A stretch of DNA of 64,000 bases, from positions 65,224,001-65,288,000 of the forward strand of contig CM097887.1 of assembly GCA_044892525.1 (NCBI GenBank). The letters are read 5' to 3'. The notes under the pieces were generated by a model that saw only the letters and a program-made list of their open reading frames with translations, made no database searches and was not told where the DNA came from. Origin of the DNA: Schmidtea polychroa (lineage: Eukaryota). This document shows, piece by piece, positions 14,971 through 52,800 of the stretch (position 1 is the stretch's first letter; every line of letters starts with the position of its first letter). The translations under genes were made by a program, and so were the position numbers.

Positions 14971-17900
14971 ATGAATGAAACCATTTTGAATATGTATCGT
15001 GTCAATGGCTTGTGTCCAATGAGTCTGAACGGAGGCGGCAACATCAAATCGGAATTGACAGCTACCAATCCCAGCTTTCAGAAATCCGAACATGGTAAGT
15101 TATAAAGTAATAAAGTTTAGTAAAAATTTAAAAATAAATTATATGAAACGGTTTTCAATAGTCATTATTTTAGACATGACAACAGCAACGAAAATTACTA
15201 ACATGAATCAGGTATTGTTGAATTAAATTTTGGCAAATAATAGGGTTTTTTTGTTTTAAAAAAGAGTGATCGAGTGACTATGAAAATAGATGTCTCATAT
15301 ACCGATCATAGCCATGTTATAGGAAAAGGCGGACAAAGTATTAAAGCCATAATGACAGATACCCAATGCCATATTCATTTTCCAGATTCAAATCGTACGA
15401 ACACAATTGAAAAGAGTAATCAAGTCTCTATTTCTGGAATGTCTTATGGTGTTGAAATAGCTAGACAAAAAATACGAGTAATTTAATTTGGACATAATAT
15501 TTACCCGATCATTTTCTTTCCAGGCGATATTACCTTTAATATATTCTTTTGACATACCATTTACTCCATTTAACGTTATTGAACAGCAAGATCGCTTACT
15601 AATGGCTCAGCTGCAGCGGCTTTTGGAAGTAACAATATCATACAAACCAATTGGGAAATTATTAAGCGGTACAACTATATTTGTTAAAGGTATTGTGCAA
15701 AGGGCCAGACAAACTATTAAAGCCGTAAACTTAATATTAAATCATCATTTTGGACAGAATATTGTAATTGTCAATATTTAATATCATTATATTACTAACT
15801 ATTTGTAAGGAACAAGTTCCTGTAATGATGACCATTGAAATTGATCCGAAACATCATTCATTTCTATTAAATCAAGGCGGGCAAAATAGCTTAGTAAACG
15901 AAATTTTTCAGTTAACAAGAGCTACAATAAATTTCCCCGACAATACTTTTTCTTCAGCCCATGCTGTTTTAGCTGCAAACAATCCGATGGGAATATCAGG
16001 TTTATTCAAAAAATCCACTGTAAATATTCTTGGAACTGCTGAAAATACATTCGAAGCCAGGCAGCAACTAATTGTAAGATAAAAACTGTCAAATTATGAG
16101 ATGGTTTTTAAATATTTCCATGTCTTTGGAAAATAAAAAGCCTTTCTCATACTGGATTATTTTTTTATATTGTTTAAATTTGTATTTTTCTAGGGTCGTT
16201 TACCAGTGATCTTGATGTATGATATTACCATTGAAGAAGGGGTTAATTTGGAAATGTTTAATTTAAATTTTATTAATGAAAGATACGATGTTGCAATTAG
16301 TATAAAATTAAAGTTGAAACAATGCACGAAGGTTATTGTTGTATATTTTAATATAATTATATTTATATTTTTAAATAATATCTATATATAAATTTCGTTT
16401 ATTAGCCCGTTCTTGTAATATTAAGTGTCAATTTTTAATTTAAATTTTACAGTGTTAATTTATGTCATTTATTTGTTGACTATATTACATATTCAAACTT
16501 TTATCAAAATTTATATTCACCACTTAATGTACAATGTACACATTTATTATTATAAGAACTTTTATTTCTCTCAATTTCACCACTAATTATTTTTTCCATT
16601 GAATTTATTAAAAAGTTTGAAGGGTATAAGTATACAATAGGGGGGCCNNNNNNNNNNNNNNNNNNNNNNNNNNNNNNNNNNNNNNNNNNNNNNNNNNNNN
16701 NNNNNNNNNNNNNNNNNNNNNNNNNNNNNNNNNNNNNNNNNNNNNNNNNNNNNNNNNNNNNNNNNNNNNNNNNNNNNNNNNNNNNNNNNNNNATATCCTT
16801 ATTTAAAAGATGTTTTAATTAATCTTTAACGTATATATATATATATATATATATATAAATATGAGGCCATGAATTTAAAGCAAATATATGAACTTTCAAG
16901 AGACACACTGTCTTTGATAAGACATTGCCAAAGTGTAGGTTTGTTACGAGCCGATCCAACCTGCGCGACCTATACTGGTGGTCCCCGACGAAACCCAAAT
17001 GCATCTACACCTTTAGCTAGACTGGGACCGTATGTACACCAGTGGGTCCCCTAACCGGCGTTAACACCAATGGAATAGAAGGTTCGTGGGCCTTATGTAA
17101 AAGGAAATTTAAGTATATGTTTGGGACTAGATGTAGCTTCATTCCTTCGTACTTAGATGAATTCATGTGGAGAAGAAGATTTTGTCGAAATGAGCGTGCG
17201 TTTGATGTATTAATCAATCAAATACGTGAAAAATATGATTTTGGTGGTGTTTTAATTACTTTAACTATGTTTTAATTACTTTAATATATTTAAATATTTA
17301 TATCTATATATCTTTATTTATAAAAAAGTGGCCCCCCTATTGTATACTTATACCGTTTGAAGACTATAAATCAGTAATATATCGATGTTTGTTGATACTC
17401 ACGAATTTTCGGCACTGCCTTTTTCAAGTGAATTTTCACTTGAAAAAAAATTCACTTGAAAAAGGCAGTGCCGAAAATTCGTGAGTATCAACCAAGCATC
17501 GATATATCACTGATTTATATCAAACTCTCTTTAATAAATGTACACATTTATTTTGAATTTTTGGTTAAAAAACAGGGAATCTTTGCTTGTTATTATATTC
17601 AGTAATCTTTAATAAATATTATTTCCATCCATCCCAAAGAAAATTCACACACACACAATGTTTGAGAAATGTTTATCCATAAATGACTTAGATTTATGGA
17701 TATCATCTATTTCTTTTTATTTTTGTAATTCCAATTCAGAATAAAATACATCAAGTTTCATTATATAATTTAAATATAAAGACAAAATCAATTTATTTTA
17801 AACTATATCAAAATATATTATTTTTCATTTTCTTTTTTTAACAAATTAAATAGAAAAAGTGTTTACAAATATTATAACTCGTCCACGTCTTAAATGAGCA

Positions 17901-36202: not shown

Positions 36203-36354
36203 NNNNNNNNNNNNNNNNNNNNNNNNNNNNNNNNNNNNNNNNNNNNNNNNNNNNNNNNNNNNNNNNNNNNNNNNNNNNNNNNNNNNNNNNNNNNNNNNNN
36301 NNNNNNNNNNNNNNNNNNNNNNNNNNNNNNNNNNNNNNNNNNNNNNNNNNNNNN
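36203..36354. other. Assembly gap (N run)
   Basis: Run of N. Confidence 0.98.
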
Positions 36355-36746: not shown

Positions 36747-37157
36747 ATGTCAACTGTTGTAGTTAAAAAAACATCATTAACCTTAGTCGAATGTCCACCA
36801 CCTCTTTTGACAGTTAATGGGAAGCGTCGTGGTCGTAAACCTGGTGCAAACAGTACACTAGCTCAAAGAAGTGCTGCAAACTCAAGAGAAAGGTCTCGAA
36901 TGAGAGTTTTATCCAGTGCATTTATCGATTTGAAAAGCGCACTACCATGGGTGCCTAAAGATACGAAACTTTCCAAACTCGACACTCTTAAATTAGCAGC
37001 TGGATATATTGCTTATTTGAAAAGTGTTTTAGTCGACGATTTTTCAGGGACAACTTTACCACCTCCTTGGTCAGTGTATGATATTTATTCTCCATACATG
37101 GTGAACTCATCCAATAAGTGCCCAATACCAAGAGTAGGTGGTCTGATTTCATGTTAA
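36747..37157 (+). CDS. bHLH transcription factor, TCF21/musculin (MyoR) family
   Basis: [52 protein letters not shown] closely matches TCF21/[55 protein letters not shown]. The exact ortholog is not assignable. Confidence 0.9.
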
Positions 37158-38760: not shown

Positions 38761-40603
38761 TTGGTCACAATTTCTAAGTACGTGAACAATGGCTCTTACC
38801 AAACTTAGATTGTCGCAATTTCCATTCTTAACTTAAGTAATAATAATGAAATTGATGGATGATATATATTTTTATGATAGTATTAATAGTAATTTCATAC
38901 CTACATATAAAATTTTCTTTGTTCCGTGTCTGTCATGTATACCCTATAATCATACATTCAGTCATGCTCATTATTCTCAAACCAATATCAACACCAATCA
39001 AAAGAAAAAATAGAACAACAAAACACGATGAGTACATGAAGATGTCAAACAGTGTATCATCATAACTTTGAGTAGTTTTTCGGCAACATAGGACATCCAG
39101 CTTTATACCGTCGCGATGGTGTTCCTTCTAGTCATACACGGACGCTTTCCGGCACAATTATGTCCTTCGATTGGCATTGTGCGAGTGCAGATTACCTCAC
39201 CTCATCTGAAAGATGGATTAGCTCACTGCCCGTACTCGGGATGGGGTCATTTCGGATCTCTCTCTCTCTCCACACGTGTTAGGTTGCAGATTTCCACGTG
39301 TACGCATGCATTGCATCTCAATTTGAAATCCCGGGTTCCAGGAATTTAGCAGAAATTTTCTCCACGATGTCTTCTAGCTGGACCCTTTTAGGGTCTCGTC
39401 ACCGGTGCATTCTATCTTCAATTATACTCTAACATTATATGATATTCCATTCATTTTCTCATCCTCACAACCACACCATATTGCCAGACTTTACGCAGGG
39501 TCATATAACCGAAATAAGTAAAAATATCTCACTCAACTTCGTAGTGCGTCCTCAGTCCCCTTTAATTTATGACAAAAATACGATAATTAGATAGATATTT
39601 TCTCTGTCATTCTCATTAGCTTATAGCGTCCGACTGAAATGTTCGACCGGCAATCAAGTGTTCGTTAATTCCATTCAGTGTTGTAATGACTGACTAAGGC
39701 GCTATGATTAGCGTGCAATAGCATTTATTAGTCCTATTTATTGTTACCATTAGGGAATGCAAATTTACCGAATTTTCATTTACCGGTAAACGGTAAAAAT
39801 GCTGCAGTTTTAATTTCATGTTTTAAAAGGAAAGTAACGCTATAGCTTTAAAACAAAAATGTCGAAAATATAATTTTAAAGAAAGCACCAAATGCTTTAG
39901 GATTCATTGTTATTATTAAAAGATAAACATTTATAAACACACATTAATATATAAAATTATTATATAAACATTATTCTCAATTCATTAAATAAAAAGGTAA
40001 AAAAATATTTTTACATATTTCTAAATATTTCTGCTTACTAAAATATCCACGTAAAAAAACAAATTGCAAATACTCATCTTAAATCTAATTTGAAATTTAT
40101 GAAATATGCATAAGAATGAATTTAATAAGCCTTGAATAAGAGAAAATAATGTAGGTTCATAAATCCCTTGAACTCTATATTTTATGTATAAATTGTTCTT
40201 TGTTTTAACAGCCTCGGCAATCAGATTCCCAAAAATACTAATGCTAACTTCACCTTACAGGTATTTATTAGGCTTGCCAACTCTTCCGTTTTTGCCGGGA
40301 GTCTCCCGTCTCCCGATTAAATATGACCCGGGAAATGTCTTTCCGTTTTTACAATATTTTACAATTTTTCAAGAAAAAAAGTGCAGTTTTTGAAGTTTAA
40401 ATTTTATTTGATTTCTCTAAAATCACCAAAGATATTGGAATCAGACCGACAAGAAAAAATACAATTTTAAAAACAAACAAAAATAGCATAATTTGTAAAC
40501 TGTACTGTAATTTATAAAAATAATAGTTTTTTTAAAATCTTTATGGTATTAGTCATCATATAGTTAAAATCTAGTTAAATATAGTTAAAGAGTCTAACAT
40601 ATG

Positions 40604-41380
40604 TGTTGTACCCGGTAATTTAGCGGCTTTTGACATTCGGTTAGAAACAGGAACACTTTCATTAAAATATGTCATTGAATCCGCAAACTTTTCTTGCATA
40701 TCACACAAATATAATAGTGAATTTTCCAACGCAATTAATATCACAAATTTCAATATATTTAAAGACAGTTCAATTTTTATACACAAATTAGAAATTTTAT
40801 GGAAAAAGTTCATTTTTTTTGGAATATATAAACAAGCCGGGAAATCTTTTACAAAATTTCTACATATAAGTAAACAAAATTACAAAGAATACAAAATTAT
40901 GTCATTCGATAAAAAAAAACAGATTTTTAAAAATATGTAATTTAAAAAGCTTAACGATTTTATAACGTTCGCGTAAGAATTTCAAATAGTCAATTTCTAA
41001 TAATTAAATGCAGAATAAACAAATTTAGGTTTTATATTATTGTTAGGATTTGTTCCGTATTTCGCGAATTGTAATGGATGAGGGTGTTGGTCTATGAGAG
41101 CCAACACTAAAACTATTGGGAGCCGAATACAGTTTATCTTGATAATGATAACATGGCATCGAATTTGCTTTACTCTTCTGAGATTGATTAATAGAGCCTG
41201 ATTGATAAGTAGAAGTATTAGCTGATCGCACGAATTTTGATTGACTGTTATTGTGTTCTGTTTGGTCCTTAGTCGCTGGTGACCGCGCATTTATATATAT
41301 AATATAATATCGTATAATATAATATAATATAGTATAATAGGTATATAGATATTGTTAAGGCCGTGTAACGGCTCACTACA
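40604..41380 (-). repeat. 3' LTR (777 bp)
   Basis: By eye identical to 47504-48281 except an A9 versus A10 homopolymer; preceded on the minus strand by a short purine tract (GTGGGGCTGA). Confidence 0.97.
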
Positions 41381-41549
41381 TCAGCCCCACGGGAAGTCGC
41401 GGAGCGCACAGGAACTCAAGAATAGAGATTGATGAAAGATCTACTAGAAACAAGATGTAAGTCGAAAAGTAGTGACAATTTATCAAAGGTAGATAGTGTC
41501 TAAAAAGGAAATCGGTGATTGATGAATTAATTGATCACATGGAATAAAG

Positions 41550-44500
41550 TTAAGTGAATTTCAGCATCAGATGTGTCAAGTTTTCATTGGAATAGACTCT
41601 GGCAAGTCTTGGAGGTTTGGAAATGTCTTCCCCAATTTGGCGCACCCAAATCTTATCACTATGTTTCACATTTTTCGCGGTTCGCTGCTTGTCGGGTTTC
41701 GAAACAATTGAGCGAAGATTAAGTGGATTTGTTGTTGCTGAATGTGTATTCTCTGTAGCTAAATTTTCATCGCGTTGGTAGTTTGTGATCATGGTACGCG
41801 CGATTTCGTTTGAGTCCGTGGCCGGTTCTACTGAAAGGTTTTCGTTCGACGTAGTTGAAATGGGTTCGACTGAGACTTTCTCTAAATCAGAGTGAAGTTT
41901 GTCTTCGTCCACGTCATCAGAAATCATAAAAGCCGGTTTAAGTCGGCACAAATTTATATTTTGGGTAACACCGTTAATAACGATGTGAGCATTGTTATCC
42001 TTAATGTCGATCAATTTGTAAGGCCCCGAATATCTCGGTTTGAGACCTGAATCCGTAATATTACGAAGATAAACGTGAGTTGCGTCCTTGAAGGACTTTG
42101 GGACGTACGGTGTATATGAGGAAGCATAAGAAAACTGTGGGTTGCTATCGATCGAAAGAAAATGATCTCTAGCCATATCTAATTCCTCAAAGGTAGGAGC
42201 GTTATCGAAATCAACTAATTCGTTAGGTAACGATGTTGAAGAACCAAAAAGTAACTGTGCCGGTGTAGTTCCGGTAGTCCTGGAGGGTGTGTTACGCCAA
42301 CCAAGAAGGACAAAAGGTAAAGCTTTAGTCCAATTAAGTCTCGATGAAAGTATTCCAAGAGAGGTCTTCAAAGTACGGTGAAATCTTTCGATCATGCCGT
42401 TTGTCTGAGGATGGTAAGCAGTTGAACGGAGGTGTTGTATACCGAGCTTTTCAGTTAGCTGTTGAAATAACTGGGATTCAAACTGAGATCCCCTGTCTGT
42501 GATTATTGATTTCGGAACACCGTATCTAGAAATCCAATGTTGCAAAATTGAATTTGCTACAATTTCAGCAGAAATGTTTTTCAGAGGAATAACTTCAAAC
42601 CAACGCGTTTTCCGGTCAATCATAGTTAATAAGTAAGAAAAACCGCGATCAGAAGGCAAGGGGCCGACCAGGTCGATGTGAAGAATTTCGAACCTATTTC
42701 CGGTCGGATAGTGAATCATCTGTGGCTTAGTGTGTCTAGTTATCTTGTGTTGTTGACAACCGATGCACTGACTCACCCACAATTTAATATCGTGCCTCAT
42801 TGCTGGCCAAACGACATGTGAATGCAATAGGTTGAAGGTAGCCGACGAACCTGGATGATGTAAGTCGTGAATGGAGTGGAAAGCTAATTTCCGTAAGGAA
42901 TCGTGCAAAATCGGTCTTAAAACACCTGATAAAGACGAGTCAAAGTGTACTCCGTCCACGATTTCAAGCTTATCGCCAAAAGCAGCTAGATCTTTTGCCG
43001 AAGGTGGATTGTCGCGGAGGCACTGTACTGGAAAAATCGGATCGTGCAATATAGCGTTGGTACTGTGGGAAAGACAGTCTGCAATAACGTTTTCTTTGCC
43101 GGCAATGTGGCGTATTTCGCAAGAAAATTCTGAAATATAACTGATTTGCCTCTGTTGTCGTGGAGATGGGTCTTTCATTCCAAAAAGATAAGTTAGCGGT
43201 TTGTGGTCAGTGTAGATGACAAAAGGACGACCTTCAAGCAAGTGCTTGAAATGTTTGATTGAAAGATATATGCCTAAGAGTTCTCGGTCGAAAGCCGAAT
43301 ATTTCCGTTGAGCGGAAGAAAGTTTCTTTGAGAAAAACTCTAATGGTTCAGAAATGTCATTATGTAATTGGTGTAATACTGCACCAATAGCAACGTTTGA
43401 TGCATCAGTGGTCAGACTCCAAGGTAAATCAGCATTGGGAAAATGGAGTGTTTGAATTTTCGAAAGTGCCGACTTAGCGTTTTCAAATGCACTGAGTGTG
43501 GTATCGCTCCATGACACTAAAGACTTTTTTGGTTTTGAGACGAGACCTGAAAGAGGTGACAAAATGTCAGAAACCCCTGGAATAAAACGATGACAATAGT
43601 TTATCGTTCCCAAAAAACTTCTCAGTTGTGAAACTGTTTTTGGAAGTGGGAATTTGGCTATGGTATCTAGTCTATCCGGAGGAGGTCGGATTCCATCTGC
43701 GGAAATTAAATGTCCCAGGAAACGAGTCTCGTGTTGGAAGAAAGTACACTTATCGACGTTTACCTTAAGGTTGTATTGCCGAAGTGCTGTTAAAGTTCTT
43801 GTTAGATGGGTTTTATGCGTCTCTAAGTCAGGTGATCCGACTAAAATGTCGTCTATGTAAGGAACTGCGAAAGGTAGGTCCATTAAGACTTGATCAATAT
43901 ACCTTTGAAAGGTCTGTGCAGAATTCCGAAGGCCAAATGGCATATGCACGTACTCGAAAAGTCCGATCGGAGTTATTACGGCTGTTTTTTCTATGTCAGA
44001 CTCTCGCACGGGTATCTGATGGTACGCCTTCACGAGGTCGATTGTGGAGAAAATCTTTGCCTTTGAAAGACGGTGAAGGATATCACTAACAAGCGGCATG
44101 CTATAGGAATCATGTACCGTAATAGCATTAAGGTTTCGATAGTCGCCACACGGACGGAAAGTGCCATCTTTTTTTGGGACCAGGTGCAATGGCGATGACC
44201 ATGGAGATTTAGATCTCCGAATGGTACCCTCATGTAAGAGGTTAGTAAACTCGGAACGTACAAATTCGAGTTTTTCATTCGACAGTGGTCTAATTTTGCA
44301 TCTAACTGGTAAAGATGAAGTTGTGTCGATCGTGTGGCAGTAAAGCGGCTTCGAAACGTCACTTATTGGCGTGTTAAAACACCTATTAATAATATCTAAG
44401 GCTATTTTTGGGTGTTCGATTGTTATAACCGTTTTCGACGGAGTAGTATTTATATCGTCCGTTCCTATCCGTTGTGGATCTTCAAAGATGTTTGAGGGAA

Positions 44501-44915
44501 TAGTGCTGCAGTTTAATTGATTATTTATCCTTAAAGTGCGTCCGCGGCAATCTACGAGTAGTTCGTTAGCGCTTAAAAAATCAGATCCTAATATGGGGAT
44601 AATAACCTCTGCTATATAAAATTTCCACTCAAATAATTGGTCGGACAGAAATGGCAACGAGAAAGCAATTGTCTTTGAACCTAAAGTCTCAACAACACTA
44701 CCGTTTGCGGCCTTCAAAGAAATATCGACAGTGTTGAGGTCTGGAAGGTACTCTTTAGGTAAGATCGACAAGCTGGAACCAGTGTCGACAAGGAATTTTA
44801 GTCTGTTGGAAGGAGACGACAATATATTAAAAGCGTTTGACTCTGCTTCTATTAAAAATAAGTCTGATTTCGATGAAATTTTGCCTCCCACCTCTGCCGC
44901 TAGAAGTGGTGGCAT
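41550..44915 (-). CDS. pol: Pol polyprotein (aspartic protease, RT, RNase H, integrase)
   Basis: FLVDTGSS protease; RPCGDYRNLN, MPFGLRNS and YIDDIL RT; TTDASN...DRELLG...TDHKPL RNase H; HDLHHPG...CIGC, HIDLVGP, TDRGSQF and GMIERFHR integrase. Confidence 0.97.
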   Translation of the reverse strand: MPPLLAAEVGGKISSKSDLFLIEAESNAFNILSSPSNRLKFLVDTGSSLSILPKEYLPDLNTVDISLKAANGSVVETLGSKTIAFSLPFLSDQLFEWKFYIAEVIIPILGSDFLSANELLVDCRGRTLRINNQLNCSTIPSNIFEDPQRIGTDDINTTPSKTVITIEHPKIALDIINRCFNTPISDVSKPLYCHTIDTTSSLPVRCKIRPLSNEKLEFVRSEFTNLLHEGTIRRSKSPWSSPLHLVPKKDGTFRPCGDYRNLNAITVHDSYSMPLVSDILHRLSKAKIFSTIDLVKAYHQIPVRESDIEKTAVITPIGLFEYVHMPFGLRNSAQTFQRYIDQVLMDLPFAVPYIDDILVGSPDLETHKTHLTRTLTALRQYNLKVNVDKCTFFQHETRFLGHLISADGIRPPPDRLDTIAKFPLPKTVSQLRSFLGTINYCHRFIPGVSDILSPLSGLVSKPKKSLVSWSDTTLSAFENAKSALSKIQTLHFPNADLPWSLTTDASNVAIGAVLHQLHNDISEPLEFFSKKLSSAQRKYSAFDRELLGIYLSIKHFKHLLEGRPFVIYTDHKPLTYLFGMKDPSPRQQRQISYISEFSCEIRHIAGKENVIADCLSHSTNAILHDPIFPVQCLRDNPPSAKDLAAFGDKLEIVDGVHFDSSLSGVLRPILHDSLRKLAFHSIHDLHHPGSSATFNLLHSHVVWPAMRHDIKLWVSQCIGCQQHKITRHTKPQMIHYPTGNRFEILHIDLVGPLPSDRGFSYLLTMIDRKTRWFEVIPLKNISAEIVANSILQHWISRYGVPKSIITDRGSQFESQLFQQLTEKLGIQHLRSTAYHPQTNGMIERFHRTLKTSLGILSSRLNWTKALPFVLLGWRNTPSRTTGTTPAQLLFGSSTSLPNELVDFDNAPTFEELDMARDHFLSIDSNPQFSYASSYTPYVPKSFKDATHVYLRNITDSGLKPRYSGPYKLIDIKDNNAHIVINGVTQNINLCRLKPAFMISDDVDEDKLHSDLEKVSVEPISTTSNENLSVEPATDSNEIARTMITNYQRDENLATENTHSATTNPLNLRSIVSKPDKQRTAKNVKHSDKIWVRQIGEDISKPPRLARVYSNENLTHLMLKFT

Positions 44916-47713
44916 TATAAGTTTTTTTGATTGCTTGCTTTAGGTTTTGTGTAATTGGAGCAGCCTTCGAAGCATTTTAAGGCTTTATCTCCAAACCTGT
45001 CGTGGTATATGCACTTGTCCAGTATCTGACAGGATGGTGCTTTATCTCGCCAATTGCAACCTAGATGGCAGAACCGTGCCTTGTTACGAAACTTAAAATG
45101 GAAACGGCACAGGTTCCTGGTTGCAGGGGAAGGTGAACGTTGACGAGTATTTTGCACAAAGTGTGATTTTTGGGCATATTGCCTGTCGTCATTTGTCCGC
45201 CTGGTGGACATGCTATTCTCAAGCTCGCTGATGCGTTTAGTGAGACCTGTAATAGCGCAAAGTAAGGCTTCTTCGGTCGAAGGTTTTAAAGAAGAAGAAG
45301 AAGGTAAAATTTCGGGGTTAGTGCTGCTACTTAACTGCACAGAGCAAGTTGGTTGCGGACCAAGTGGCACGACTTCGTTAATCTTGTCGGCCATCTTTGC
45401 TAGCTCTACCACGTCTGCTGTTGACGAAAGCGCTAAAATTTGTTGTGCGTGTGGCGGTAAAGCAGACAGAAAAAATTGCCTCAAGAGTTTTTGATCCGCC
45501 GCAGCCTCCGGGTGTATTTGCGTTAGTTCCGCCATAGCGTGTTGCAAGAACTGTGATGGTTTTCTGCTGCCCAAAGTTTGCGTCTTAAAGTATTTAGTGA
45601 AGACGGCAGCTGTAGGTTCCTTAAAAATATCGAGGATTGCCGTACGCAATTCTTCATATGGGTTTTTTACGCTAGTAGGCGAAGTGCGAAGGATCACGGA
45701 CGAAAGTTTACTTAATATCGTCGGCGGAATCAACGGCAAGATGCGACAGTATTTGTCTCGTGAACTGGTTACCTCGATTCCCTCGAGTGCTAGTTCGGTA
45801 GCTATCAGCCAAGTAAGTGGAGAGTTATTCTCATCCAAAAAATATTGACATAGGTACGTTGATCGCTGGTTGTTGGACCTACGTTTATGTTTTGCCTGTT
45901 TGGGGTTGCTGCCTGAGTCATTCTCCGAATCGGAGGAACCGCCAGAAAGTGGCAACAAGCAATGAATGACGCTGTATGGTGTCACTCCATAGTCGCCCAA
46001 GGTACGACTGTCGGAAAGGATGTTGCCATTATACGACAAGAGAAAACGGCATTTGTGATTTGTCAATATGCTGTAATTTTTAGAAAGACCTCTAATTGTA
46101 GTGTCTGTGTCAACTGAAACGGTTTGTGTCTTATTTGTTACAGGGTTTTCTATTAATATTTGGAACTTTTTGGGCCCCGGTGCGGCGCTACCCTCTCGTG
46201 TGGGCTGATGCTTATTTAAATAATTTATTATAATTTTATATATGATATTAATAATAATATAAATCAATAATAATATAGTATAATTTAATAATAATATAAT
46301 AATATAATTTAGAGGTAATCGATCTAAGGTACCTGGCGGTGCTGACACGGGCATTGCTTGATTGAGTCTCGATTCGCTGGGAGACGGTTTATTATCCTGA
46401 ATAAATGGCTGTCCCGGTGCACGAGAGTTTAATGTGAAAAAATCATTATTCTGTTGCATTAAGAATTCATTTGGATTTGGTCGAAGCATGATGCGTTGTG
46501 GGGCTGTGTATAAGACATCACTCGTTAGCAATTTGTTATTTGGTATATAATTATTGATCGGAGTCATTTTTTTACGATTTTCAACGGCAATCATCTCAGC
46601 CAATGCTTGCCGGGAAACATTAATCGAATCAAAATCTATATCGGCTGTATCTTTATATTTCTGATCGTAATGTGAATTCGGTTTCTCCGAGCCAAATATG
46701 CGATTTATATCCATTTCGTTTCGATCCTGATACTGACCGTAGTTAAGTACACCGTTGTTGTTTGCCTGTTGATTGATGTTGTGATCGTATGACTGATTAT
46801 TATTATTGTTATTCTTGATTGCGGCGTGGTTTTGAGAATTTAACTGGCAGAAACTTTCCAGCAGAGAATTCGACAAACCAACTGAATTCAAACTGTTCAT
46901 AAATGATTTCTGATCTGAAAGCCGTGACAAGGGAGATGTAGAATTCAGTGTACTGTGGAATTCAGTAATATCATTACCAGCTGAGCTATTGAAAGCACTG
47001 AATAGGGGAAATTCGGATTTAGTATCCGATGATTCAGATTGTAATTGAATACTTTTCTTGATAAATTTGAAAGACGATTTATTTATCGGGTCAGCAATTT
47101 GAAATTGACCATTTGGAATATGATTATTATCTGTGATATTTGCAGGGGTCGAAATGGAATCACCTAGAACGACTACGGGATCCAAAGAATCACGATCTGG
47201 AATTGTCTGAGTTAATTTGATATACTCTTCTCGATTCGATGACAAAAAACAGGAATGAGCAATTATCAATTGATCTATCAGCCTATCAATATCATGGGAT
47301 ATAGGATTAAATTTTGATGAAAGTTTTAATTCAGAAAATATTTTGGAAAGCATATGGAACATATTTTGACGTAATTCCGCTGTTCGTTTATGAGAAACTA
47401 ATATAGATTGTATTTCCTGTAATCTGGATTTAGCAATGATATTAGATAAATAAGTTTCTAATTGTTCAAATCTTGAACATTGTTCTGGCACTTCTGACAC
47501 CAATGTTGTACCCGGTAATTTAGCGGCTTTTGACATTCGGTTAGAAACAGGAACACTTTCATTAAAATATGTCATTGAATCCGCAAACTTTTCTTGCATA
47601 TCACACAAATATAATAGTGAATTTTCCAACGCAATTAATATCACAAATTTCAATATATTTAAAGACAGTTCAATTTTTATACACAAATTAGAAATTTTAT
47701 GGAAAAAGTTCAT
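44915..47713 (-). CDS. gag: Extended Gag ORF1: N-terminal extension, TM-like segment, ubiquitin-like domain, capsid, two CHCC motifs
   Basis: 932-codon ORF. The capsid-like region is NSPLTWL...KYCRILPLIP...NPYEELRTAI...LGSRKPSQFL...DVVELAKMAD. The Ubl spans residues 517-592. The true start codon is uncertain because the ORF opens inside the LTR. Confidence 0.9.
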   Translation of the reverse strand: MNFFHKISNLCIKIELSLNILKFVILIALENSLLYLCDMQEKFADSMTYFNESVPVSNRMSKAAKLPGTTLVSEVPEQCSRFEQLETYLSNIIAKSRLQEIQSILVSHKRTAELRQNMFHMLSKIFSELKLSSKFNPISHDIDRLIDQLIIAHSCFLSSNREEYIKLTQTIPDRDSLDPVVVLGDSISTPANITDNNHIPNGQFQIADPINKSSFKFIKKSIQLQSESSDTKSEFPLFSAFNSSAGNDITEFHSTLNSTSPLSRLSDQKSFMNSLNSVGLSNSLLESFCQLNSQNHAAIKNNNNNNQSYDHNINQQANNNGVLNYGQYQDRNEMDINRIFGSEKPNSHYDQKYKDTADIDFDSINVSRQALAEMIAVENRKKMTPINNYIPNNKLLTSDVLYTAPQRIMLRPNPNEFLMQQNNDFFTLNSRAPGQPFIQDNKPSPSESRLNQAMPVSAPPGTLDRLPLNYIIILLLNYTILLLIYIIINIIYKIIINYLNKHQPTREGSAAPGPKKFQILIENPVTNKTQTVSVDTDTTIRGLSKNYSILTNHKCRFLLSYNGNILSDSRTLGDYGVTPYSVIHCLLPLSGGSSDSENDSGSNPKQAKHKRRSNNQRSTYLCQYFLDENNSPLTWLIATELALEGIEVTSSRDKYCRILPLIPPTILSKLSSVILRTSPTSVKNPYEELRTAILDIFKEPTAAVFTKYFKTQTLGSRKPSQFLQHAMAELTQIHPEAAADQKLLRQFFLSALPPHAQQILALSSTADVVELAKMADKINEVVPLGPQPTCSVQLSSSTNPEILPSSSSLKPSTEEALLCAITGLTKRISELENSMSTRRTNDDRQYAQKSHFVQNTRQRSPSPATRNLCRFHFKFRNKARFCHLGCNWRDKAPSCQILDKCIYHDRFGDKALKCFEGCSNYTKPKASNQKNL
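47489..47502 (-). promoter_or_regulatory. Primer-binding site (tRNA-Leu)
   Basis: TGGTGTCAGAAGTG lies one nt after the 5' LTR and is complementary to the tRNA-Leu 3' end ...CACUUCUGACACCA. Confidence 0.85.
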
Positions 47714-48281
47714 TTTTTTTGGAATATATAAACAAGCCGGGAAATCTTTTACAAAATTTCTACATATAAGTAAACAAAATTACAAAGAATACAAAATTAT
47801 GTCATTCGATAAAAAAAAAACAGATTTTTAAAAATATGTAATTTAAAAAGCTTAACGATTTTATAACGTTCGCGTAAGAATTTCAAATAGTCAATTTCTA
47901 ATAATTAAATGCAGAATAAACAAATTTAGGTTTTATATTATTGTTAGGATTTGTTCCGTATTTCGCGAATTGTAATGGATGAGGGTGTTGGTCTATGAGA
48001 GCCAACACTAAAACTATTGGGAGCCGAATACAGTTTATCTTGATAATGATAACATGGCATCGAATTTGCTTTACTCTTCTGAGATTGATTAATAGAGCCT
48101 GATTGATAAGTAGAAGTATTAGCTGATCGCACGAATTTTGATTGACTGTTATTGTGTTCTGTTTGGTCCTTAGTCGCTGGTGACCGCGCATTTATATATA
48201 TAATATAATATCGTATAATATAATATAATATAGTATAATAGGTATATAGATATTGTTAAGGCCGTGTAACGGCTCACTACA
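47504..48281 (-). repeat. 5' LTR (778 bp)
   Basis: Direct repeat of 40604-41380, adjacent to the PBS. Confidence 0.97.
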
Positions 48282-48556
48282 ATATGTAAACCAAAAAAGT
48301 GAAAAAACACCTGCTATATTATTTCTTAAGCGTTATACGGTTCGAAATTTTATAATCTTCCGGGTTCGAGGTTGTGGGAGTTGGCAACCCTAGTATTTAT
48401 GCAAATTTTCTGTAGATCATTTCTACTTTAATATCCCTCATTTAGGAGTTAAACTAATACGGCATCAAAATCTTTAGTAATAAATCATTATCTACTTTAC
48501 GCTTATAGAATATTACAAATGTTAGGTTCGTATAATGGGACATGAGTCATATGAGT

Positions 48557-49681: not shown

Positions 49682-49811
49682 NNNNNNNNNNNNNNNNNNN
49701 NNNNNNNNNNNNNNNNNNNNNNNNNNNNNNNNNNNNNNNNNNNNNNNNNNNNNNNNNNNNNNNNNNNNNNNNNNNNNNNNNNNNNNNNNNNNNNNNNNNN
49801 NNNNNNNNNNN
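49682..49811. other. Assembly gap (N run)
   Basis: Run of N. Confidence 0.99.
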
Positions 49812-52800
49812 GAGGAAATTTTTCTTAGTCAGACATACGATCTTATGCGTTAGACTCAGACTGGCCCCATCATACATCAAATGACGACATTAATATTCCT
49901 TCATGTGAGCCCGTGGCGATGTTTCCACGTTGGTTCTGCCCACACGGGTTGGAGTTGGTTAACAGGTGAGCCCCTGCCTTAGGACTACTGTTAACCCCCT
50001 CGCAAGGTGCCTTAGAAGGACTTACCCACAATCTCATACATTCTCGGGTCGACCCTGGTCCAAGGGGACAACCTTCATTCAATGTCATATATTCAGTCTA
50101 CCAATCAAATCGGGTGTTTCACTCATCATCCTCGCAAAATAACTCGTTAGATATCAAACAATTATATTAAATTAGATAACACACATTAAATTGCAAATAA
50201 CAAAACCCATTTTATCAAAGTCCGATGCACAAGAATTAGAGAATAAAATGAATGTTCGTCATATACAGGAGAGTCGGCCAATACGAGCGTCCGATCAGGT
50301 AGACAAACACTGTTGTTACCTTGGAATTATCAAAACACCTCACCGTCTGCGAACACTTCGTCAATGTCCACAGGTAAGCGGCGATCCGCGAGATACTTAA
50401 CACCATCGGCCGGTACTACTCGAAATATTTCTTTGGCCGGAATCACATGCGAACTCGAAATTTCTTTGAGTGTGGACTGGGCCACTGATAACGAAGCTTC
50501 CAGTGCTGCCATCGCATCTCGGCGTTTCTGATTCTTGGCGGCTCTGGTTGGCCGTTTCCGTTTGCGAGAAGACAGCTGATTTTTCGCGATAGAGGTGATG
50601 GAGGGTGCTACTAACACAGGGGCCGAAATAGGGTCGGAAGAGCCACCTGCTAACGGCTGATAAGTAGATAATACTGGGGCTGGAATGGGCGGCAGATAAG
50701 AATCATGCCTTGGCAGTTCGATGCAGTTGCTTGAGACGTCTGGTGGTGCAGGGGAAAGACGTTAGTGCTATCCAAGACGGGGAATTCTCGAACCCGTTTG
50801 GTCAGTTCTGCATCCGTGTATACCTTGTGCAGTGCTTCGGACTGTGCTTTAATTGTCAGCCTTTGACAACGGCTCTCCTCCAGCAGGCTGTCCCTGCAAT
50901 GCTCCAACCGGAGGATTTTCTTTCGCTCCTCCTTCATCCGTGGCGGGCAGAACCACGTGCCCTCATAGAGGTCAATGCGTTTCTTTAGAGCCCCGATATA
51001 TAGATGTAATTGGGCAATATCCGCGTTCTTGTCTGCGCAAGAAAAACACGGGCGAAGTTCCTTGGTCGGATTGGATTTTGAAGACATCTAGAAATCCAGA
51101 AGATATATAGTGATTAATAGGTTCATTTACGCGAGGCTTACAAATGTAAATATGAGTGCATTCACCCCATCAATCATTCCACTCAGCAATGACTATCTCA
51201 ATGGTCAACATTCAACATCAAACTTTTATTTTTACCAGCTTTATACCAATAACTTCCAAATTCTGGAGACGCGTATTTTATTCCAAGCCTAACATTAGCA
51301 TTTTTCATTTATTTTTATTTATACTAAGTGTAGTGAATTCTATCGACAAAACAAAATTGTAGGCTATCCATGTCATAGGAAACGATGGGTATTCCTTAAC
51401 GCATTTTACCTTGCACTTAAAAGGCTTTTAGAAAACTCTAATATCCCTTAATTTTCATTAAAAAATTATTTAAAATTCAATTTAAATCGGAGTATGAGGG
51501 TAGTCATGGAAATCCCTGACTCTATCTCCATGTCAACGTGTATTCCTCTCCTGTGTGTGCATGCGGGGATTTAGTCTAATTATGTAAGGAGTGATTGTAG
51601 TTCGTGCCTTGCTATAAACCGTTTTAGTAATCTCTATATCGGATTCTCCGCTATGATATTATCTAATCAGGCACATATAGTCTGAGTGGGTGTAGAGATA
51701 ATGTCATGGCTTATACTCCGCTCTGGCACTGACAGGCTCGTAGGTGTGTATCGTCAGACTTATCGGTCATCGTGCCTAAAATTACCGATGGAGTTTGGTC
51801 AAAAGAAAATCTATAATATGGATTGCGAAATCAATATTCTAATTTTGGAAATTATCTCCACAATGATCGGCTGGACGCTAACTCCCTTATCATCGTTCGA
51901 TAGGCTATATTTACCACAGCTAGTCGTTGACGAATGGGTTTATAAAGTGGTCATTGCCTCCTAATCTATTAGCTGAGCGCTTTCGGAAAACTTCCTTATC
52001 AATCTGTCACCATCTCTTTAAAGGAGAGCCAAATCGCAAGATAAATTCTTACCAACTGGCCGTCATCGAGTTTTCGTCAGGGCTAAAGTGAGTGTTTACA
52101 TTAGTTATCAGGAAGTTTTCATGTTTCGTCTAGATTCGACAGTTATCGACGATAGAGGCCTGACAAGATGGATTGCCACGTCGACTCCACTCAGCGTAAA
52201 GTTGAGATGAGAGATCTATCCGCTAACGTCTTAGCGATGTTCATCCTAAAAGAGTTCGATTTCCAGAAATCTCAAATGAATCTCATGGATAAAATTTTTG
52301 AATGTAGCTTTCTATTATTGAAATATTCGATCATTCGTCTCATCTATCATGGCCAATAGTAGTGAGGAGTTAACGAAAAAGTGATTTGCTGTCGCGTTGG
52401 AAATTCCTACTTCGAAGGTTTTCTGGAATTCTCAGCTGAAGGATTCTCTATATCCCACCTGGATTCGTATCTGTTTATGAGAGAGATTTCGTGAAAACAA
52501 CCGATCATCACTCGGTGGACAATTCTCTCCGTACACAATGACTACTATATCCGATGTCCTCACCCCTCCTGACCCACCTAAGGACGGCAATCATCGCTGC
52601 CACCGTCCCTAGACCGCCAGGAAGGACGATTCGATCTCCTCAACCTCCAATCATCGATTTTCCATAAAAATTATTGTAAAAGTTAAATGGTATAATTAAA
52701 TAGCTTAGTTCTTTATAAAATTTTCTAATATATGAAAAATTATTTATCCGGCGACCACGCCGCCTGAGTCTCGAATATGATGCCATTCCACGATAATCAC

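What the first reader, a model, noticed from the sequence alone, without database searches (positions are those of the whole stretch)
45938..46165. Ubiquitin-like domain with intact C-terminal Gly-Gly fused in front of a retrotransposon Gag
SEEN: ORF1 residues 517-592 are exactly 76 aa: FQILIENPVTNKTQTVSVDTDTTIRGLSKNYSILTNHKCRFLLSYNGNILSDSRTLGDYGVTPYSVIHCLLPLSGG. They align with ubiquitin without gaps over the C-terminal half, with identities at Q2, I3, G47, L50, D52, R54, T55, L56, D58, Y59, S65, H68, L71, L73, G75 and G76. I44, K48, K63, R72 and R74 are replaced (S, N, P, P, S). Cleavage after GG would release a 340-aa protein (basic KQAKHKRR patch, capsid, CHCC fingers), a normal size for such a Gag. 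KNOWN: GG is the site where deubiquitinases/Ubl proteases cut linear fusions such as Ub-ribosomal protein precursors, and cytopathic pestiviruses use a captured ubiquitin between NS2 and NS3 as a host-cleaved processing signal. INFERENCE: the element captured a Ubl and uses it as a host-protease-cleavable linker to mature Gag, or as a decoy or conjugatable modifier. Loss of the I44 patch and K48 argues against a proteasome signal. I do not know of this architecture in CsRn1-type elements but cannot search to confirm novelty.
Basis: partly seen in the sequence, partly recalled or inferred. Interest (0 to 1): 0.92.

Follow-up and report, generated by a model that had tools for sequence, protein, structure and literature searches.

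The report
Ubiquitin-like module preceding retrotransposon Gag
An intact, very young LTR retrotransposon makes its capsid protein (Gag) behind a ubiquitin-derived domain ending in Gly-Gly, and dozens of unannotated relatives keep exactly that Gly-Gly, which suggests the host's own deubiquitinating enzymes cut Gag free.

Summary
On the minus strand, window 45938-46165 encodes residues 517-592 of a 932-aa ORF1. This is a 76-aa ubiquitin-family domain: Pfam PF00240, E 6.5e-11; AlphaFold pLDDT 90.6; Foldseek TM 0.8-0.9 to ubiquitin and ISG15. It ends in Gly-Gly.

ORF1 belongs to a complete LTR retrotransposon at 40604-48281. The LTRs are 99.87% identical, the target-site duplication is 5 bp, and gag and pol are intact with an A_AAA_AAC slippery site.

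The main new result is comparative. An exhaustive search of 1.84 billion protein representatives found at least 36 related Gags, in one clade, with the same layout: a variable N-terminal extension, then a Ubl ending in GG, then Gag.
- The Ubl bodies are only about 17% identical pairwise, yet G75 and G76 are invariant (37/37).
- L73 is kept in 31/37, and the residue after GG is never Pro.
- GG lies where stand-alone Gags of Ubl-less relatives begin.
- The Ile44 patch is lost across the family.

ORF1 starts in the LTR and reads through the primer-binding site. In relatives the extensions carry fragments of host genes.

The best reading is a host-deubiquitinase-cleaved module that gives Gag a defined N-terminus. 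Cleavage is inferred, not shown. Ten full-text literature searches found no description of this architecture. I rate it a new variant of a known kind.

The parts
40604..48281 (-). Complete LTR retrotransposon (7678 bp), both ORFs intact
   Evidence: LTR pair found by self-BLAST. TG..CA termini and flanking 5-bp repeat. Single copy in the window.
47504..48281 (-). 5' LTR (778 bp). Its last 210 nt encode ORF1 residues 1-70.
   Evidence: 99.87% identical to the 3' LTR, with one indel. ORF1 ATG at 47713.
40604..41380 (-). 3' LTR (777 bp)
48282..48286 (-). Target-site duplication CATAT, upstream copy
   Evidence: Read; matches 40599-40603.
40599..40603 (-). Target-site duplication CATAT, downstream copy
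47489..47502 (-). Primer-binding site TGGTGTCAGAAGTG, one base after the 5' LTR and inside ORF1
   Evidence: The same 12-13-mer is conserved in L006, L007, L008, L009, L011 and L012, in different reading frames and with unrelated flanks.
44915..47713 (-). ORF1 (932 aa plus stop): N-terminal extension, Ubl, linker, Gag
   Evidence: The other five frames of its first 516 codons hold 28-52 stops each; P(no stop) is about 3e-17.
46166..47713 (-). N-terminal extension, residues 1-516. It has a predicted-helical part, a long S/N/Q-rich low-complexity part, and no detectable homologue.
   Evidence: No Pfam family. No hit for residues 71-460 in the 5.8-billion-protein set. No representative hit starts before residue 461 among the best 150. 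Composition.
46214..46318 (-). AT-rich, strongly hydrophobic I/L/Y/N segment, about residues 466-500, just upstream of the Ubl
   Evidence: Kyte-Doolittle windows above 1.6; DNA. A transmembrane or signal-anchor-like role and a low-complexity insertion cannot be told apart here.
45938..46165 (-). Ubiquitin-like domain, ORF1 residues 517-592 (76 aa)
   Evidence: Pfam PF00240 E 6.5e-11; PDB phmmer; AF2 pLDDT 90.6; Foldseek TM 0.8-0.9 to ubiquitin and ISG15.
45938..45943 (-). Gly591-Gly592 codons (G75-G76 of the Ubl), the proposed cleavage site
   Evidence: The only invariant columns among 37 Ubl-bearing family members.
45851..45937 (-). Ser/Asp-rich then basic linker, residues 593-621, predicted disordered
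   Evidence: pLDDT below 50 for model residues 76-100. Homology to stand-alone Gags starts at residue 622.
44918..45937 (-). Gag proper, residues 593-932 (340 aa): DUF7041-type helical core, long helix, two CHCC knuckles
   Evidence: 36% identical to P0001, a 332-aa Gag lying directly upstream of a pol. DUF7041 scores 25.3 bits, below the gathering cut-off of 28. High-confidence helical core.
44960..45109 (-). Two CHCC zinc knuckles (C-X2-H-X9-C-X3-C), residues 869-886 and 901-918
   Evidence: Read. C869 and H872 are nearly invariant in A2. Motif definition from PMC2582038.
44921..44927 (-). A_AAA_AAC slippery heptamer in the gag frame, 3 nt before the gag stop. pol is in the -1 frame.
   Evidence: The same heptamer sits at the gag end in L001, L006, L007, L010 and L011.
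41550..44915 (-). ORF2 pol (1121 aa): protease, RT, RNase H, integrase
   Evidence: Pfam RVT_1 1.7e-33, RT_RNaseH 6.7e-30, rve 7.6e-16, Integrase_H2C2 3.7e-13, weak RVP.
41381..41390 (-). Short purine-rich stretch abutting the 3' LTR (putative polypurine tract)
   Evidence: Read. Assigned by position only; this is an inference.

Best explanation
The Ubl is a ubiquitin-derived processing module built into ORF1 of a clade of CHCC-Gag (CsRn1-like) Ty3/Gypsy retrotransposons.

Proposed mechanism:
1. Translation starts at an AUG in the U5 part of the 5' LTR or in the leader. It runs through the primer-binding site and a long, poorly conserved N-terminal extension.
2. It then reaches a beta-grasp domain whose tail ends in L-x-G-G.
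3. Host deubiquitinating or Ubl-specific proteases cut after Gly592, as they cut natural ubiquitin fusion precursors.
4. This releases a 340-aa Gag with a defined, non-Met N-terminus (Ser593) followed by a disordered linker. It also releases a separate 592-aa product, extension plus Ubl.

The module makes Gag independent of whatever is translated upstream. The upstream region is therefore free to vary and to pick up host gene fragments.

What is shown: the fold, the GG, its family-wide invariance, its position at the normal Gag N-terminus, and the translated leader.
What is inferred: cleavage itself, the enzyme, and the benefit to the element.
For: 1. The Ubl is a real ubiquitin-family beta-grasp domain with a terminal GG.

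2. An exhaustive phmmer search of 1.84 billion representatives was run. Of the best 150 hits, 134 are Gag relatives and the other 16 match only the Ubl as multi-copy ubiquitin repeats. Among the 134, 36 carry an extension ending in GG upstream of the Gag core.

3. In the 37-sequence alignment, G75 and G76 are 37/37 and are the only invariant columns. L73 is 31/37 (plus 4 Ile). Position 72 is R in 24 and K in 5. Position 74 is free. Yet Ubl positions 1-74 are only 17% identical pairwise, against 34% for the Gag core.

4. The residue after GG is S15, A4, N4, M4, G3, T3, V1, Q1, D1, K1, and never Pro. By established knowledge of the ubiquitin-fusion technique, Pro is the one residue in that position that resists deubiquitinases.

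5. GG sits 11-48 aa before the Gag core. Ubl-less relatives start with Met 17-27 aa before it. Lengths after GG have a median of 314 aa (340 here), against 300-334 aa for stand-alone Gags.

6. The residues right after GG are predicted disordered.

7. The L8/I44/V70 receptor patch and K48/K63 are not conserved. What is kept is the fold core plus the tail.

8. Lengths upstream of the Ubl range from 15 to 876 aa and are unrelated to each other. Some hold host pieces: CNOT1 and Rrp44, SCC3, histone H2A, 5'-nucleotidase.

9. All Ubl-bearing Gags fall in one neighbour-joining clade of 46, with 0 of 82 outside it. Ubl divergence tracks Gag divergence (Mantel r 0.61, 0/2000).

10. P0032 has a 68%-ubiquitin module, while its Gag neighbours at 61-65% identity carry Ubls only 21-24% like it. 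This suggests a canonical ubiquitin can replace the module.

11. These ORFs are contiguous and are followed by pol.
Against: - No protein-level evidence exists. Cleavage is inferred from conservation only.
- The window's own tail is atypical for the family: Pro at position 72 (2/37) and Ser at position 74 (2/37). Position 72 is Arg in ubiquitin, so recognition by ubiquitin-specific enzymes may be weak in this copy.
- The Ile44 patch that many deubiquitinases also contact is absent.
- An N-terminal extension in front of a ubiquitin moiety is unusual for natural fusion precursors.
- I could not show that translation really begins at the LTR ATG rather than at a later Met. The last in-frame Met before the Ubl is residue 454.
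- Relatives come from metagenome assemblies without organism names, so independent lineages and repeated sampling cannot be fully separated.
Confidence: 0.65

Rival explanations
1. The Ubl is a permanent N-terminal domain of Gag and is not cleaved. It would act as an integral ubiquitin-like domain, for example docking Gag or its particles to proteasome, shuttle-factor or segregase machinery, or aiding folding and assembly.
For: Integral Ubl domains are common in eukaryotic proteins, and Ubl plus retropepsin is the layout of Ddi1 (PMC7072860 and PMC4962041, listed). Fold-core hydrophobic positions are conserved: L43 25/37, L50 24/37, position 61 mostly Ile.
Against: The only invariant positions are the terminal GG, followed by a disordered linker. 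By established knowledge, integral Ubl domains generally do not keep GG. The receptor-binding L8/I44/V70 patch is replaced by polar residues family-wide. Close relatives make a normal Gag with no Ubl at all (P0001, P0023, P0037). An 876-aa or 516-aa appendage left on a capsid protein is hard to reconcile with assembly.
Confidence: 0.12
2. The point of the module is the released upstream product, not Gag. After cleavage the extension-Ubl, or in short-leader relatives a nearly free Ubl, exposes GG. It is then conjugated by host E1/E2/E3 enzymes, or acts as a decoy that titrates them or deubiquitinases. This is compatible with cleavage and adds to it.
For: An exposed C-terminal GG is what conjugation needs. 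Position 72 is Arg or Lys in 29/37, and Arg72 is a known E1 specificity determinant for ubiquitin (established knowledge). One relative carries an upstream ORF with a weak WWE-domain hit, a domain of ubiquitin and ADP-ribose signalling.
Against: The window's copy has Pro72. Lysines and surface patches used in chains and by receptors are not conserved. The Ubl body evolves about twice as fast as Gag, which is not expected for a modifier that must fit an E1, an E2 and targets. The upstream parts are unrelated between elements.
Confidence: 0.1
3. The Ubl is a decaying passenger. A ubiquitin cDNA was captured once by template switching and is drifting. Gag would be matured by the element's own aspartic protease, or initiated internally. 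In this view GG has no role.
For: The Ubl body is very divergent: 9-27 of 76 identical to ubiquitin in most members. Host fragments are plainly picked up in this region. The element encodes its own protease.
Against: Two adjacent columns invariant in 37/37, next to columns at 17% mean pairwise identity, are not drift. No in-frame Met lies between residue 454 and residue 727, which is inside the capsid core, so Gag cannot be initiated just after the Ubl. Every clade member with an extension of 60 aa or more keeps GG.
Confidence: 0.05
4. Chance resemblance, or an annotation or assembly artefact such as a host ubiquitin exon fused to a TE ORF.
For: None beyond the low (36%) identity to ubiquitin.
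Against: The Ubl and Gag share one uninterrupted ORF inside an element with near-identical LTRs and a target-site duplication. The Pfam, PDB, AF2 and Foldseek results agree. The same junction occurs in dozens of contiguous ORFs from independent assemblies.
Confidence: 0.01

Closest known systems
Ubiquitin and Ubl-ribosomal protein fusion precursors (ubiquitin-eL40, ubiquitin-eS31; FUBI-eS30/FAU cleaved by USP36: PMC8354635, PMC10611586)
   Same: A 70-odd-residue beta-grasp domain ends in GG and is fused directly in front of a structural protein that must be freed to assemble. A host deubiquitinase does the cutting. In FUBI the Ubl is itself a diverged ubiquitin relative.
   Different: Here the partner is a retrotransposon capsid protein. 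The module sits in a mobile element and evolves very fast. It is usually preceded by a further N-terminal extension of 15-876 aa, whereas natural precursors start with the Ubl. Cleavage is not demonstrated here.
Host ubiquitin insertions in cytopathogenic pestivirus polyproteins (PMC8310069, PMC13517609, PMC2850149; BVDV polyprotein fragments also came up in the BFVD fold search)
   Same: A captured cellular ubiquitin lies inside a polyprotein, with viral protein upstream. Host ubiquitin hydrolases then create the exact N-terminus of the downstream protein.
   Different: Those are sporadic recombinants of an RNA virus carrying essentially unaltered ubiquitin, and they are evolutionary dead ends. 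Here the module is inherited through a whole retrotransposon clade and is strongly diverged except for fold core and tail. It precedes Gag, not a protease/helicase.
CsRn1 clade of Ty3/Gypsy LTR retrotransposons (CsRn1, PwRn1, AgCR, Boudicca; PMC2582038)
   Same: The CHCC Gag knuckle C-X2-H-X9-C-X3-C (two copies here), PR-RT-RH-IN order, gag/pol overlap with a -1 frameshift, and a metazoan host.
   Different: The primer-binding site is not the tRNA-Trp type reported for that clade. The target duplication is 5 bp, not 4. That paper does not mention a Ubl or a long N-terminal extension of Gag.
2A 'ribosome-skipping' peptides at the N-terminal part of ORFs of non-LTR retrotransposons (PMC3708506)
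   Same: A retroelement-encoded device that separates an upstream polypeptide from the downstream element protein within one ORF, without the element's own protease.
   Different: 2A is an 18-20-aa co-translational recoding signal and needs no host protease. It occurs in non-LTR elements. It is unrelated in sequence and fold.
Ddi1/Ddi2 (Ubl plus retropepsin-like domain; PMC7072860, PMC4962041)
   Same: A ubiquitin-like domain placed N-terminal to a retroelement-derived protein.
   Different: Ddi1's Ubl is an integral, uncleaved domain of a host protein and is joined to a protease fold, not to Gag. It is not part of a mobile element.

Membership tests
Ubiquitin family (Pfam PF00240), beta-grasp fold | Sequence match above the curated threshold | tested here: met
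   42.3 bits for the 76 aa alone and 36 bits within ORF1, against a cut-off of 25.4.
Ubiquitin family (Pfam PF00240), beta-grasp fold | beta-beta-alpha-beta-beta-(3-10)-beta grasp fold | tested here: met
   AF2 pLDDT 90.6. Foldseek TM 0.8-0.9 and rmsd 1.0-1.9 A to ubiquitin and the ISG15 C-terminal domain.
Processed (type I) ubiquitin-like modifiers and fusion precursors | C-terminal Gly-Gly at positions 75-76, followed by a non-Pro residue | tested here: met
   G591-G592 then Ser. 37/37 GG and 0/37 Pro after GG in the family.
Processed (type I) ubiquitin-like modifiers and fusion precursors | Actual endoproteolytic cleavage after GG by a deubiquitinase or Ubl protease | not testable with these tools
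   No protein data. Inferred from conservation only.
Ubiquitin proper (signal recognised by ubiquitin receptors and chain-building enzymes) | L8/I44/V70 hydrophobic patch and K48/K63 | tested here: not met
   The window has P8, S44, L70, N48, P63. The family is polar at positions 8, 44 and 70.
Ty3/Gypsy (Metaviridae) LTR retrotransposon | Paired LTRs with TG..CA ends, target-site duplication, PBS next to the 5' LTR, gag then pol with PR-RT-RH-IN order | tested here: met
CsRn1 clade | CHCC Gag signature C-X2-H-X9-C-X3-C | tested here: met
   Two copies, at residues 869-886 and 901-918 (definition).
CsRn1 clade | PBS complementary to tRNA-Trp (TGGTGAG/CCCCGT/A in PMC2582038) | tested here: not met
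   The PBS here is TGGTGTCAGAAGTG. It shares only the first five bases but is conserved among the Ubl-bearing relatives.
CsRn1 clade | 4-bp target-site duplication | tested here: not met
   5-bp CATAT.
CsRn1 clade | Placement within the clade in an RT/pol phylogeny with named reference elements | not tested
   No named reference sequences were available through the tools. All relatives retrieved are anonymous metagenome proteins.
Gag of DUF7041 type (Pfam PF23055) | Match above the gathering score | tested here: inconclusive
   25.3 bits against a cut-off of 28 in the window's protein. However, 22/39 close relatives match, identity to P0001 is 36% over 314 aa with E 3e-56, and the position directly upstream of pol is the same.

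The most novel reading that the evidence does not exclude
The Ubl-GG module is a general 'N-terminal reset' that has turned the 5' leader of this retrotransposon clade into an open, translated capture site.

Any sequence that lands in frame between U5 and the Ubl is expressed from the element's own promoter and then clipped off by host deubiquitinases as a separate protein, without disturbing Gag. That includes fragments of host genes such as CNOT1, Rrp44, cohesin SA, histone H2A and 5'-nucleotidase.

This would be a natural, heritable expression cassette for stolen host protein fragments, possibly dominant-negative modulators of host RNA decay or chromatin defence. The module could also be periodically renewed by recapture of host ubiquitin.
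Probability: 0.3. Interest if true: 0.9.

Novelty: new variant of a known kind. Interest (0 to 1): 0.8.

Why it matters
Retroelements are thought to mature Gag either by direct initiation or with their own aspartic protease. Here an entire clade appears to outsource creation of the Gag N-terminus to the host ubiquitin system. Until now that trick was known from cellular ribosomal-protein precursors and from sporadic pestivirus recombinants.

It would matter in four ways:
- It would be a new way for mobile elements to depend on, and be vulnerable to, a host pathway.
- The conservation pattern (fold core plus R/K-L-x-G-G, everything else free) is a natural deep mutational scan of what a linear ubiquitin fusion needs in order to be processed.
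- It would explain how long, fast-evolving, host-fragment-bearing N-terminal extensions can be tolerated in front of a capsid protein.
- It shows that ORF1 can start in U5 and read through the primer-binding site.

The family is unannotated in public data, so the finding also gives annotators a recognisable signature.

Tried and rejected
1. An exact-sequence look-up of ORF1 in public assemblies found nothing. Neither the host genome nor sister copies could be retrieved, so no copy-level dN/dS was possible.

In hindsight a Gag-based query would have used it better.

3. A word-indexed search with Ubl plus Gag (416 aa) found only Ubl-less Gags of 243-346 aa. The fusion family appeared only in the exhaustive search.

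4. A search with the N-terminal extension (residues 71-460) found no homologue, and Pfam found nothing there.

5. Fold searches with the 416-aa Ubl+Gag model, against PDB and BFVD, gave only ubiquitin-type matches and no confident capsid match. The Gag assignment therefore rests on sequence homology, synteny with pol, and the CHCC knuckles.

6. I considered that the AT-rich hydrophobic stretch (46214-46318) is an intron. The obvious GT..AG pairs I read give lengths that are not multiples of three, and the frame is open across it. No splice predictor was available, so this stays unresolved.

7. I considered that host-gene pieces in relatives are gene-model chimeras. I rejected this because the proteins are contiguous ORFs on metagenome contigs. 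For pieces that lie upstream of the PBS (histone H2A in L011, Rrp44 in L009), I could not tell LTR-borne sequence from flanking host DNA. The CNOT1 piece in L009 lies between the PBS and the Ubl, so it is internal.

8. The host organism could not be named. All that can be said is that it is an AT-rich (about 27% GC) metazoan-like genome with a bHLH gene nearby.

9. phmmer of the Ubl against the relatives, run with a large nominal database size, was too insensitive. I replaced it with alignment-based column counts.


Full report
**1. What is at the coordinates**

The finding lies on the minus strand. The plus-strand translation of 45938-46165 is meaningless. On the minus strand there are two long ORFs: ORF1 at 47713->44915 (932 aa) and ORF2 at 44915->41550 (1121 aa). 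No other ORF of 150 aa or more exists in the 64-kb window apart from one 193-aa ORF.

The basic patch and two C-X2-H-X9-C-X3-C knuckles (residues 869-886 and 901-918) are present.

**2. The element**

- Self-BLAST finds a 777/778-bp direct repeat, 99.87% identical with one indel, at 40604-41380 and 47504-48281.
- The repeats start TG and end CA and are flanked by a 5-bp duplication, CATAT.
- One base after the 5' LTR lies TGGTGTCAGAAGTG (47489-47502).
- ORF2 has protease, RT, RNase H and integrase domains.
- The gag stop is preceded by A_AAA_AAC in the gag frame, and pol is in the -1 frame.
- Neither gene has a break.

This is a complete and very young Ty3/Gypsy-type LTR retrotransposon of 7678 bp, present once in the window. 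The surrounding genome is about 27% GC, against 42-44% for gag and pol. It carries a bHLH gene about 3.5 kb away, so the host is an AT-rich animal-like genome that I could not name.

**3. The Ubl is real**

- Pfam PF00240 scores E 6.5e-11 and 42.3 bits, against a cut-off of 25.4.
- phmmer against PDB sequences returns ubiquitin chains.
- AlphaFold2 on a 37-row alignment gives pLDDT 90.6 with the beta-grasp order of elements.
- Foldseek puts the ISG15 C-terminal domain and ubiquitin first, with TM 0.8-0.9 and rmsd 1-2 A.
- Identity to a natural ubiquitin taken from locus L003 is 27/76.

**4. ORF1 starts in the LTR and its long N-terminal part is a maintained reading frame**

The ATG at 47713 lies 210 nt inside the 5' LTR, so residues 1-70 are LTR-encoded and the primer-binding site is read as codons.

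The first 516 codons have no stop, while the other five frames hold 28-52 stops each. From composition, P(no stop) is about 3e-17, and 2000 shuffles never exceeded 176 open codons.

This part has no Pfam family. It has no homologue in the word-indexed search. No match to it appears among the best 150 of the exhaustive search.

It has three sections: a section that looks helical, a long S/N/Q-rich low-complexity section, and an AT-rich, very hydrophobic stretch just before the Ubl. No in-frame Met occurs between residue 454 and residue 727. Gag therefore cannot be started just downstream of the Ubl.

**5. The comparative result**

A word-indexed search with Ubl plus Gag found only ordinary Gags of 243-346 aa with no Ubl. 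The best, P0001, is 36% identical and lies directly upstream of a pol with the same one-base stop/start overlap.

The exhaustive phmmer search of 1.84 billion representatives changed the picture. Many top hits aligned from within the Ubl onward. Printing the residues upstream of the Gag core showed the same pattern in relative after relative: a hydrophobic-x-(R/K)-L-x-G-G tail followed by a Ser/Asp-rich linker.

Counts from the 134 Gag relatives:
- All 34 with a full-length extension ending in GG, plus 3 N-terminally truncated ones, fall in a single neighbour-joining clade of 46. None of the 82 outside that clade has it.
- Inside the clade, every member with an extension of 60 aa or more has GG.
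- The clade members without it are fragments or complete short-N-terminus Gags (P0001, P0023, P0037).

**6. What is conserved**

The alignment holds the window's Ubl and 36 relatives.
- G75 and G76 are the only invariant columns (37/37).
- L73 is L in 31 and I in 4.
- Position 72 is R in 24, K in 5, Q in 3 and P in 2.
- Position 74 is free.
- The core positions are moderately kept: L43 25/37, G47 23/37, L50 24/37.
- The residue after GG is never Pro.
- Positions 8, 44 and 70 are polar, and K48 is Lys in only 11/37.
- Ubl positions 1-74 average 17% pairwise identity, against 34% for the Gag core.

The domain is therefore drifting fast, except for what defines a foldable ubiquitin with a cleavable tail.

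**7. Position of GG**

GG lies 11-48 aa upstream of the conserved Gag core. Stand-alone Gags begin 17-27 aa upstream of it. The length after GG has a median of 314 aa, and is 340 aa here. In the 416-aa model the 25 residues after GG have pLDDT below 50, while the Gag core is confidently helical. Cutting after GG would therefore produce a Gag of canonical size with a flexible N-terminus.

**8. Origin**

Identity of the modules to ubiquitin runs from 52/76 (P0032, P0041) through 27/76 (this window) down to about 10/76.

Ubl and Gag distances are correlated (Mantel r 0.61, 0 of 2000 permutations as high). This fits vertical inheritance from one acquisition.

P0032's Gag neighbours at 61-65% identity carry Ubls only 21-24% like P0032's. 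This is best read as a later replacement by a fresh ubiquitin, and that in turn argues that the required function is a generic ubiquitin one.

**9. The upstream region in relatives**

- Between 15 and 876 residues precede the Ubl.
- Pfam finds host-gene pieces there: Rrp44 CSD1 plus the CNOT1 CAF1-binding domain (P0051), cohesin SA HEAT (P0017), histone H2A (P0020) and 5'-nucleotidase (P0021).
- One element has a separate upstream ORF with a weak WWE hit.
- These proteins are contiguous ORFs from ENA, JGI and Logan metagenome assemblies, followed by pol where the contig allows.
- The 12-13-nt primer-binding site of the window's element recurs in L006, L007, L008, L009, L011 and L012. It occurs in different reading frames and with unrelated flanks, and always inside the called ORF1. 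Starting ORF1 in U5 and reading through the PBS is therefore a family trait.
- The CNOT1 piece of L009 lies between the PBS and the Ubl, so it is internal. The H2A and Rrp44 pieces lie upstream of the PBS, so they are LTR-borne or flanking. I could not decide which.
- The copy in L012 has its ORF1 in two pieces (one break) relative to L011.

**10. Mechanism**

The simplest account of all this is that host deubiquitinating or Ubl-specific proteases cut after GG, as they do with ubiquitin and FUBI fusion precursors (PMC8354635, PMC10611586) and with captured ubiquitin in cytopathogenic pestivirus polyproteins (PMC8310069, PMC13517609). This would free Gag from whatever was translated upstream.

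What is shown: domain identity, GG invariance, the position of GG, the disordered linker, and the translated leader. What is inferred: cleavage, the enzyme, and the selective benefit.

The weak points are the window's unusual Pro72/Ser74 tail and the missing Ile44 patch.

The rivals are scored in their own sections: an uncleaved integral domain, a released conjugatable or decoy Ubl, and a decaying passenger.

**11. Comparison and novelty**

The element has the CHCC Gag signature of the CsRn1 clade, but not that clade's tRNA-Trp PBS or its 4-bp duplication. I call it CsRn1-like, not a tested member.

Ten full-text searches turned up engineered ubiquitin-Gag fusions, Ddi1, ubiquilin-PEG10 biology, 2A peptides in non-LTR elements (PMC3708506), and giant planarian elements with ubiquitination-related domains (PMC6431247). 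None described a natural Ubl-GG-Gag retrotransposon. Repbase reports and subscription journals were not searchable, so prior mention cannot be excluded.

**12. Rule compliance**

Every comparison in this report rests on tool-returned sequences (and the L003-derived ubiquitin).

Conservation is given as column counts only. The consensus lines that the alignment tool printed were not used.

Noticed in passing
window 44921-44927 (-); L001, L006, L007, L010, L011 gag 3' ends: A canonical A_AAA_AAC -1 slippery heptamer sits a few nucleotides before the gag stop. It is conserved in 5 of 6 relatives examined, with a one-base stop/start overlap (TAATG) between gag and pol. No downstream stimulatory RNA structure was looked for.
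   Followed up: partly
window 47489-47502 (-); L006:1044, L007:142 and 5218, L008:214, L009:1358, L011:1675, L012:1210: The primer-binding site TGGTGTCAGAAG(TG) is conserved at nucleotide level across relatives and always lies inside the called ORF1, in differing frames. The priming tRNA was not identified, and there is no tRNA gene in the window.
   Followed up: partly
window 36747-37157 (+): An intronless 136-aa ORF with a strong bHLH domain (Pfam HLH, E 3.3e-15) lies about 3.5 kb from the element's 3' LTR. It is a host developmental transcription-factor gene and the only clue to a metazoan-type host.
   Followed up: partly
window 49870-52600: A GC-richer island (42.5% GC at 50001-52000, against about 27% around it) lies just past an assembly gap. 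It has several 60-145-aa ORFs on both strands. The 145-aa ORF (50650-51087, -) has no Pfam match. It may be a remnant of another mobile element.
   Followed up: partly
window 16648-16792, 36203-36354, 49682-49811: Three runs of N (145, 152 and 130 bases).
   Followed up: no
window 47898-48191 (-) and 40571-40813 (-): The LTR holds a 97-aa ATG ORF starting next to a TATA-like TATATATAAA motif. The 3' LTR repeats the first 70 codons of ORF1 as an 80-aa ORF running into flanking DNA. Significance is unknown.
   Followed up: no
window 46214-46318 (-) and LTR 48200-48250 (-): The hydrophobic I/L/Y/N stretch before the Ubl is encoded by ATT/TAT-type low-complexity DNA. It resembles an AT-rich tract in the U3 part of the LTR. 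It could be a microsatellite-like expansion kept in frame, a membrane anchor or an unrecognised intron.
   Followed up: partly
L010:411-1724 (+): In one relative a separate 437-aa ORF lies between the 5' LTR and the Ubl-Gag ORF and slightly overlaps it. It has a weak WWE-domain match (21.9 bits against a cut-off of 21.1), a domain linked to ubiquitin and ADP-ribose signalling.
   Followed up: partly
L003:1213-1926 and L005:699-1418 (+): Metagenome contigs carry a canonical ubiquitin followed in frame, right after GG, by an extension of about 160 aa of unknown identity. This is another natural ubiquitin fusion, unrelated to the element. L004 has a ubiquitin embedded in a longer ORF followed by a Myb-like stretch.
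   Followed up: no
L007 (10324 nt) and L006:9871-12567: L007 shows the Ubl-Gag/pol unit twice in tandem with a period of about 5.05 kb, which is either a tandem element or an assembly collapse on the LTR. L006 has a protein-primed-type DNA polymerase B gene (Polinton/Maverick-like) about 4 kb downstream of the element.
   Followed up: no
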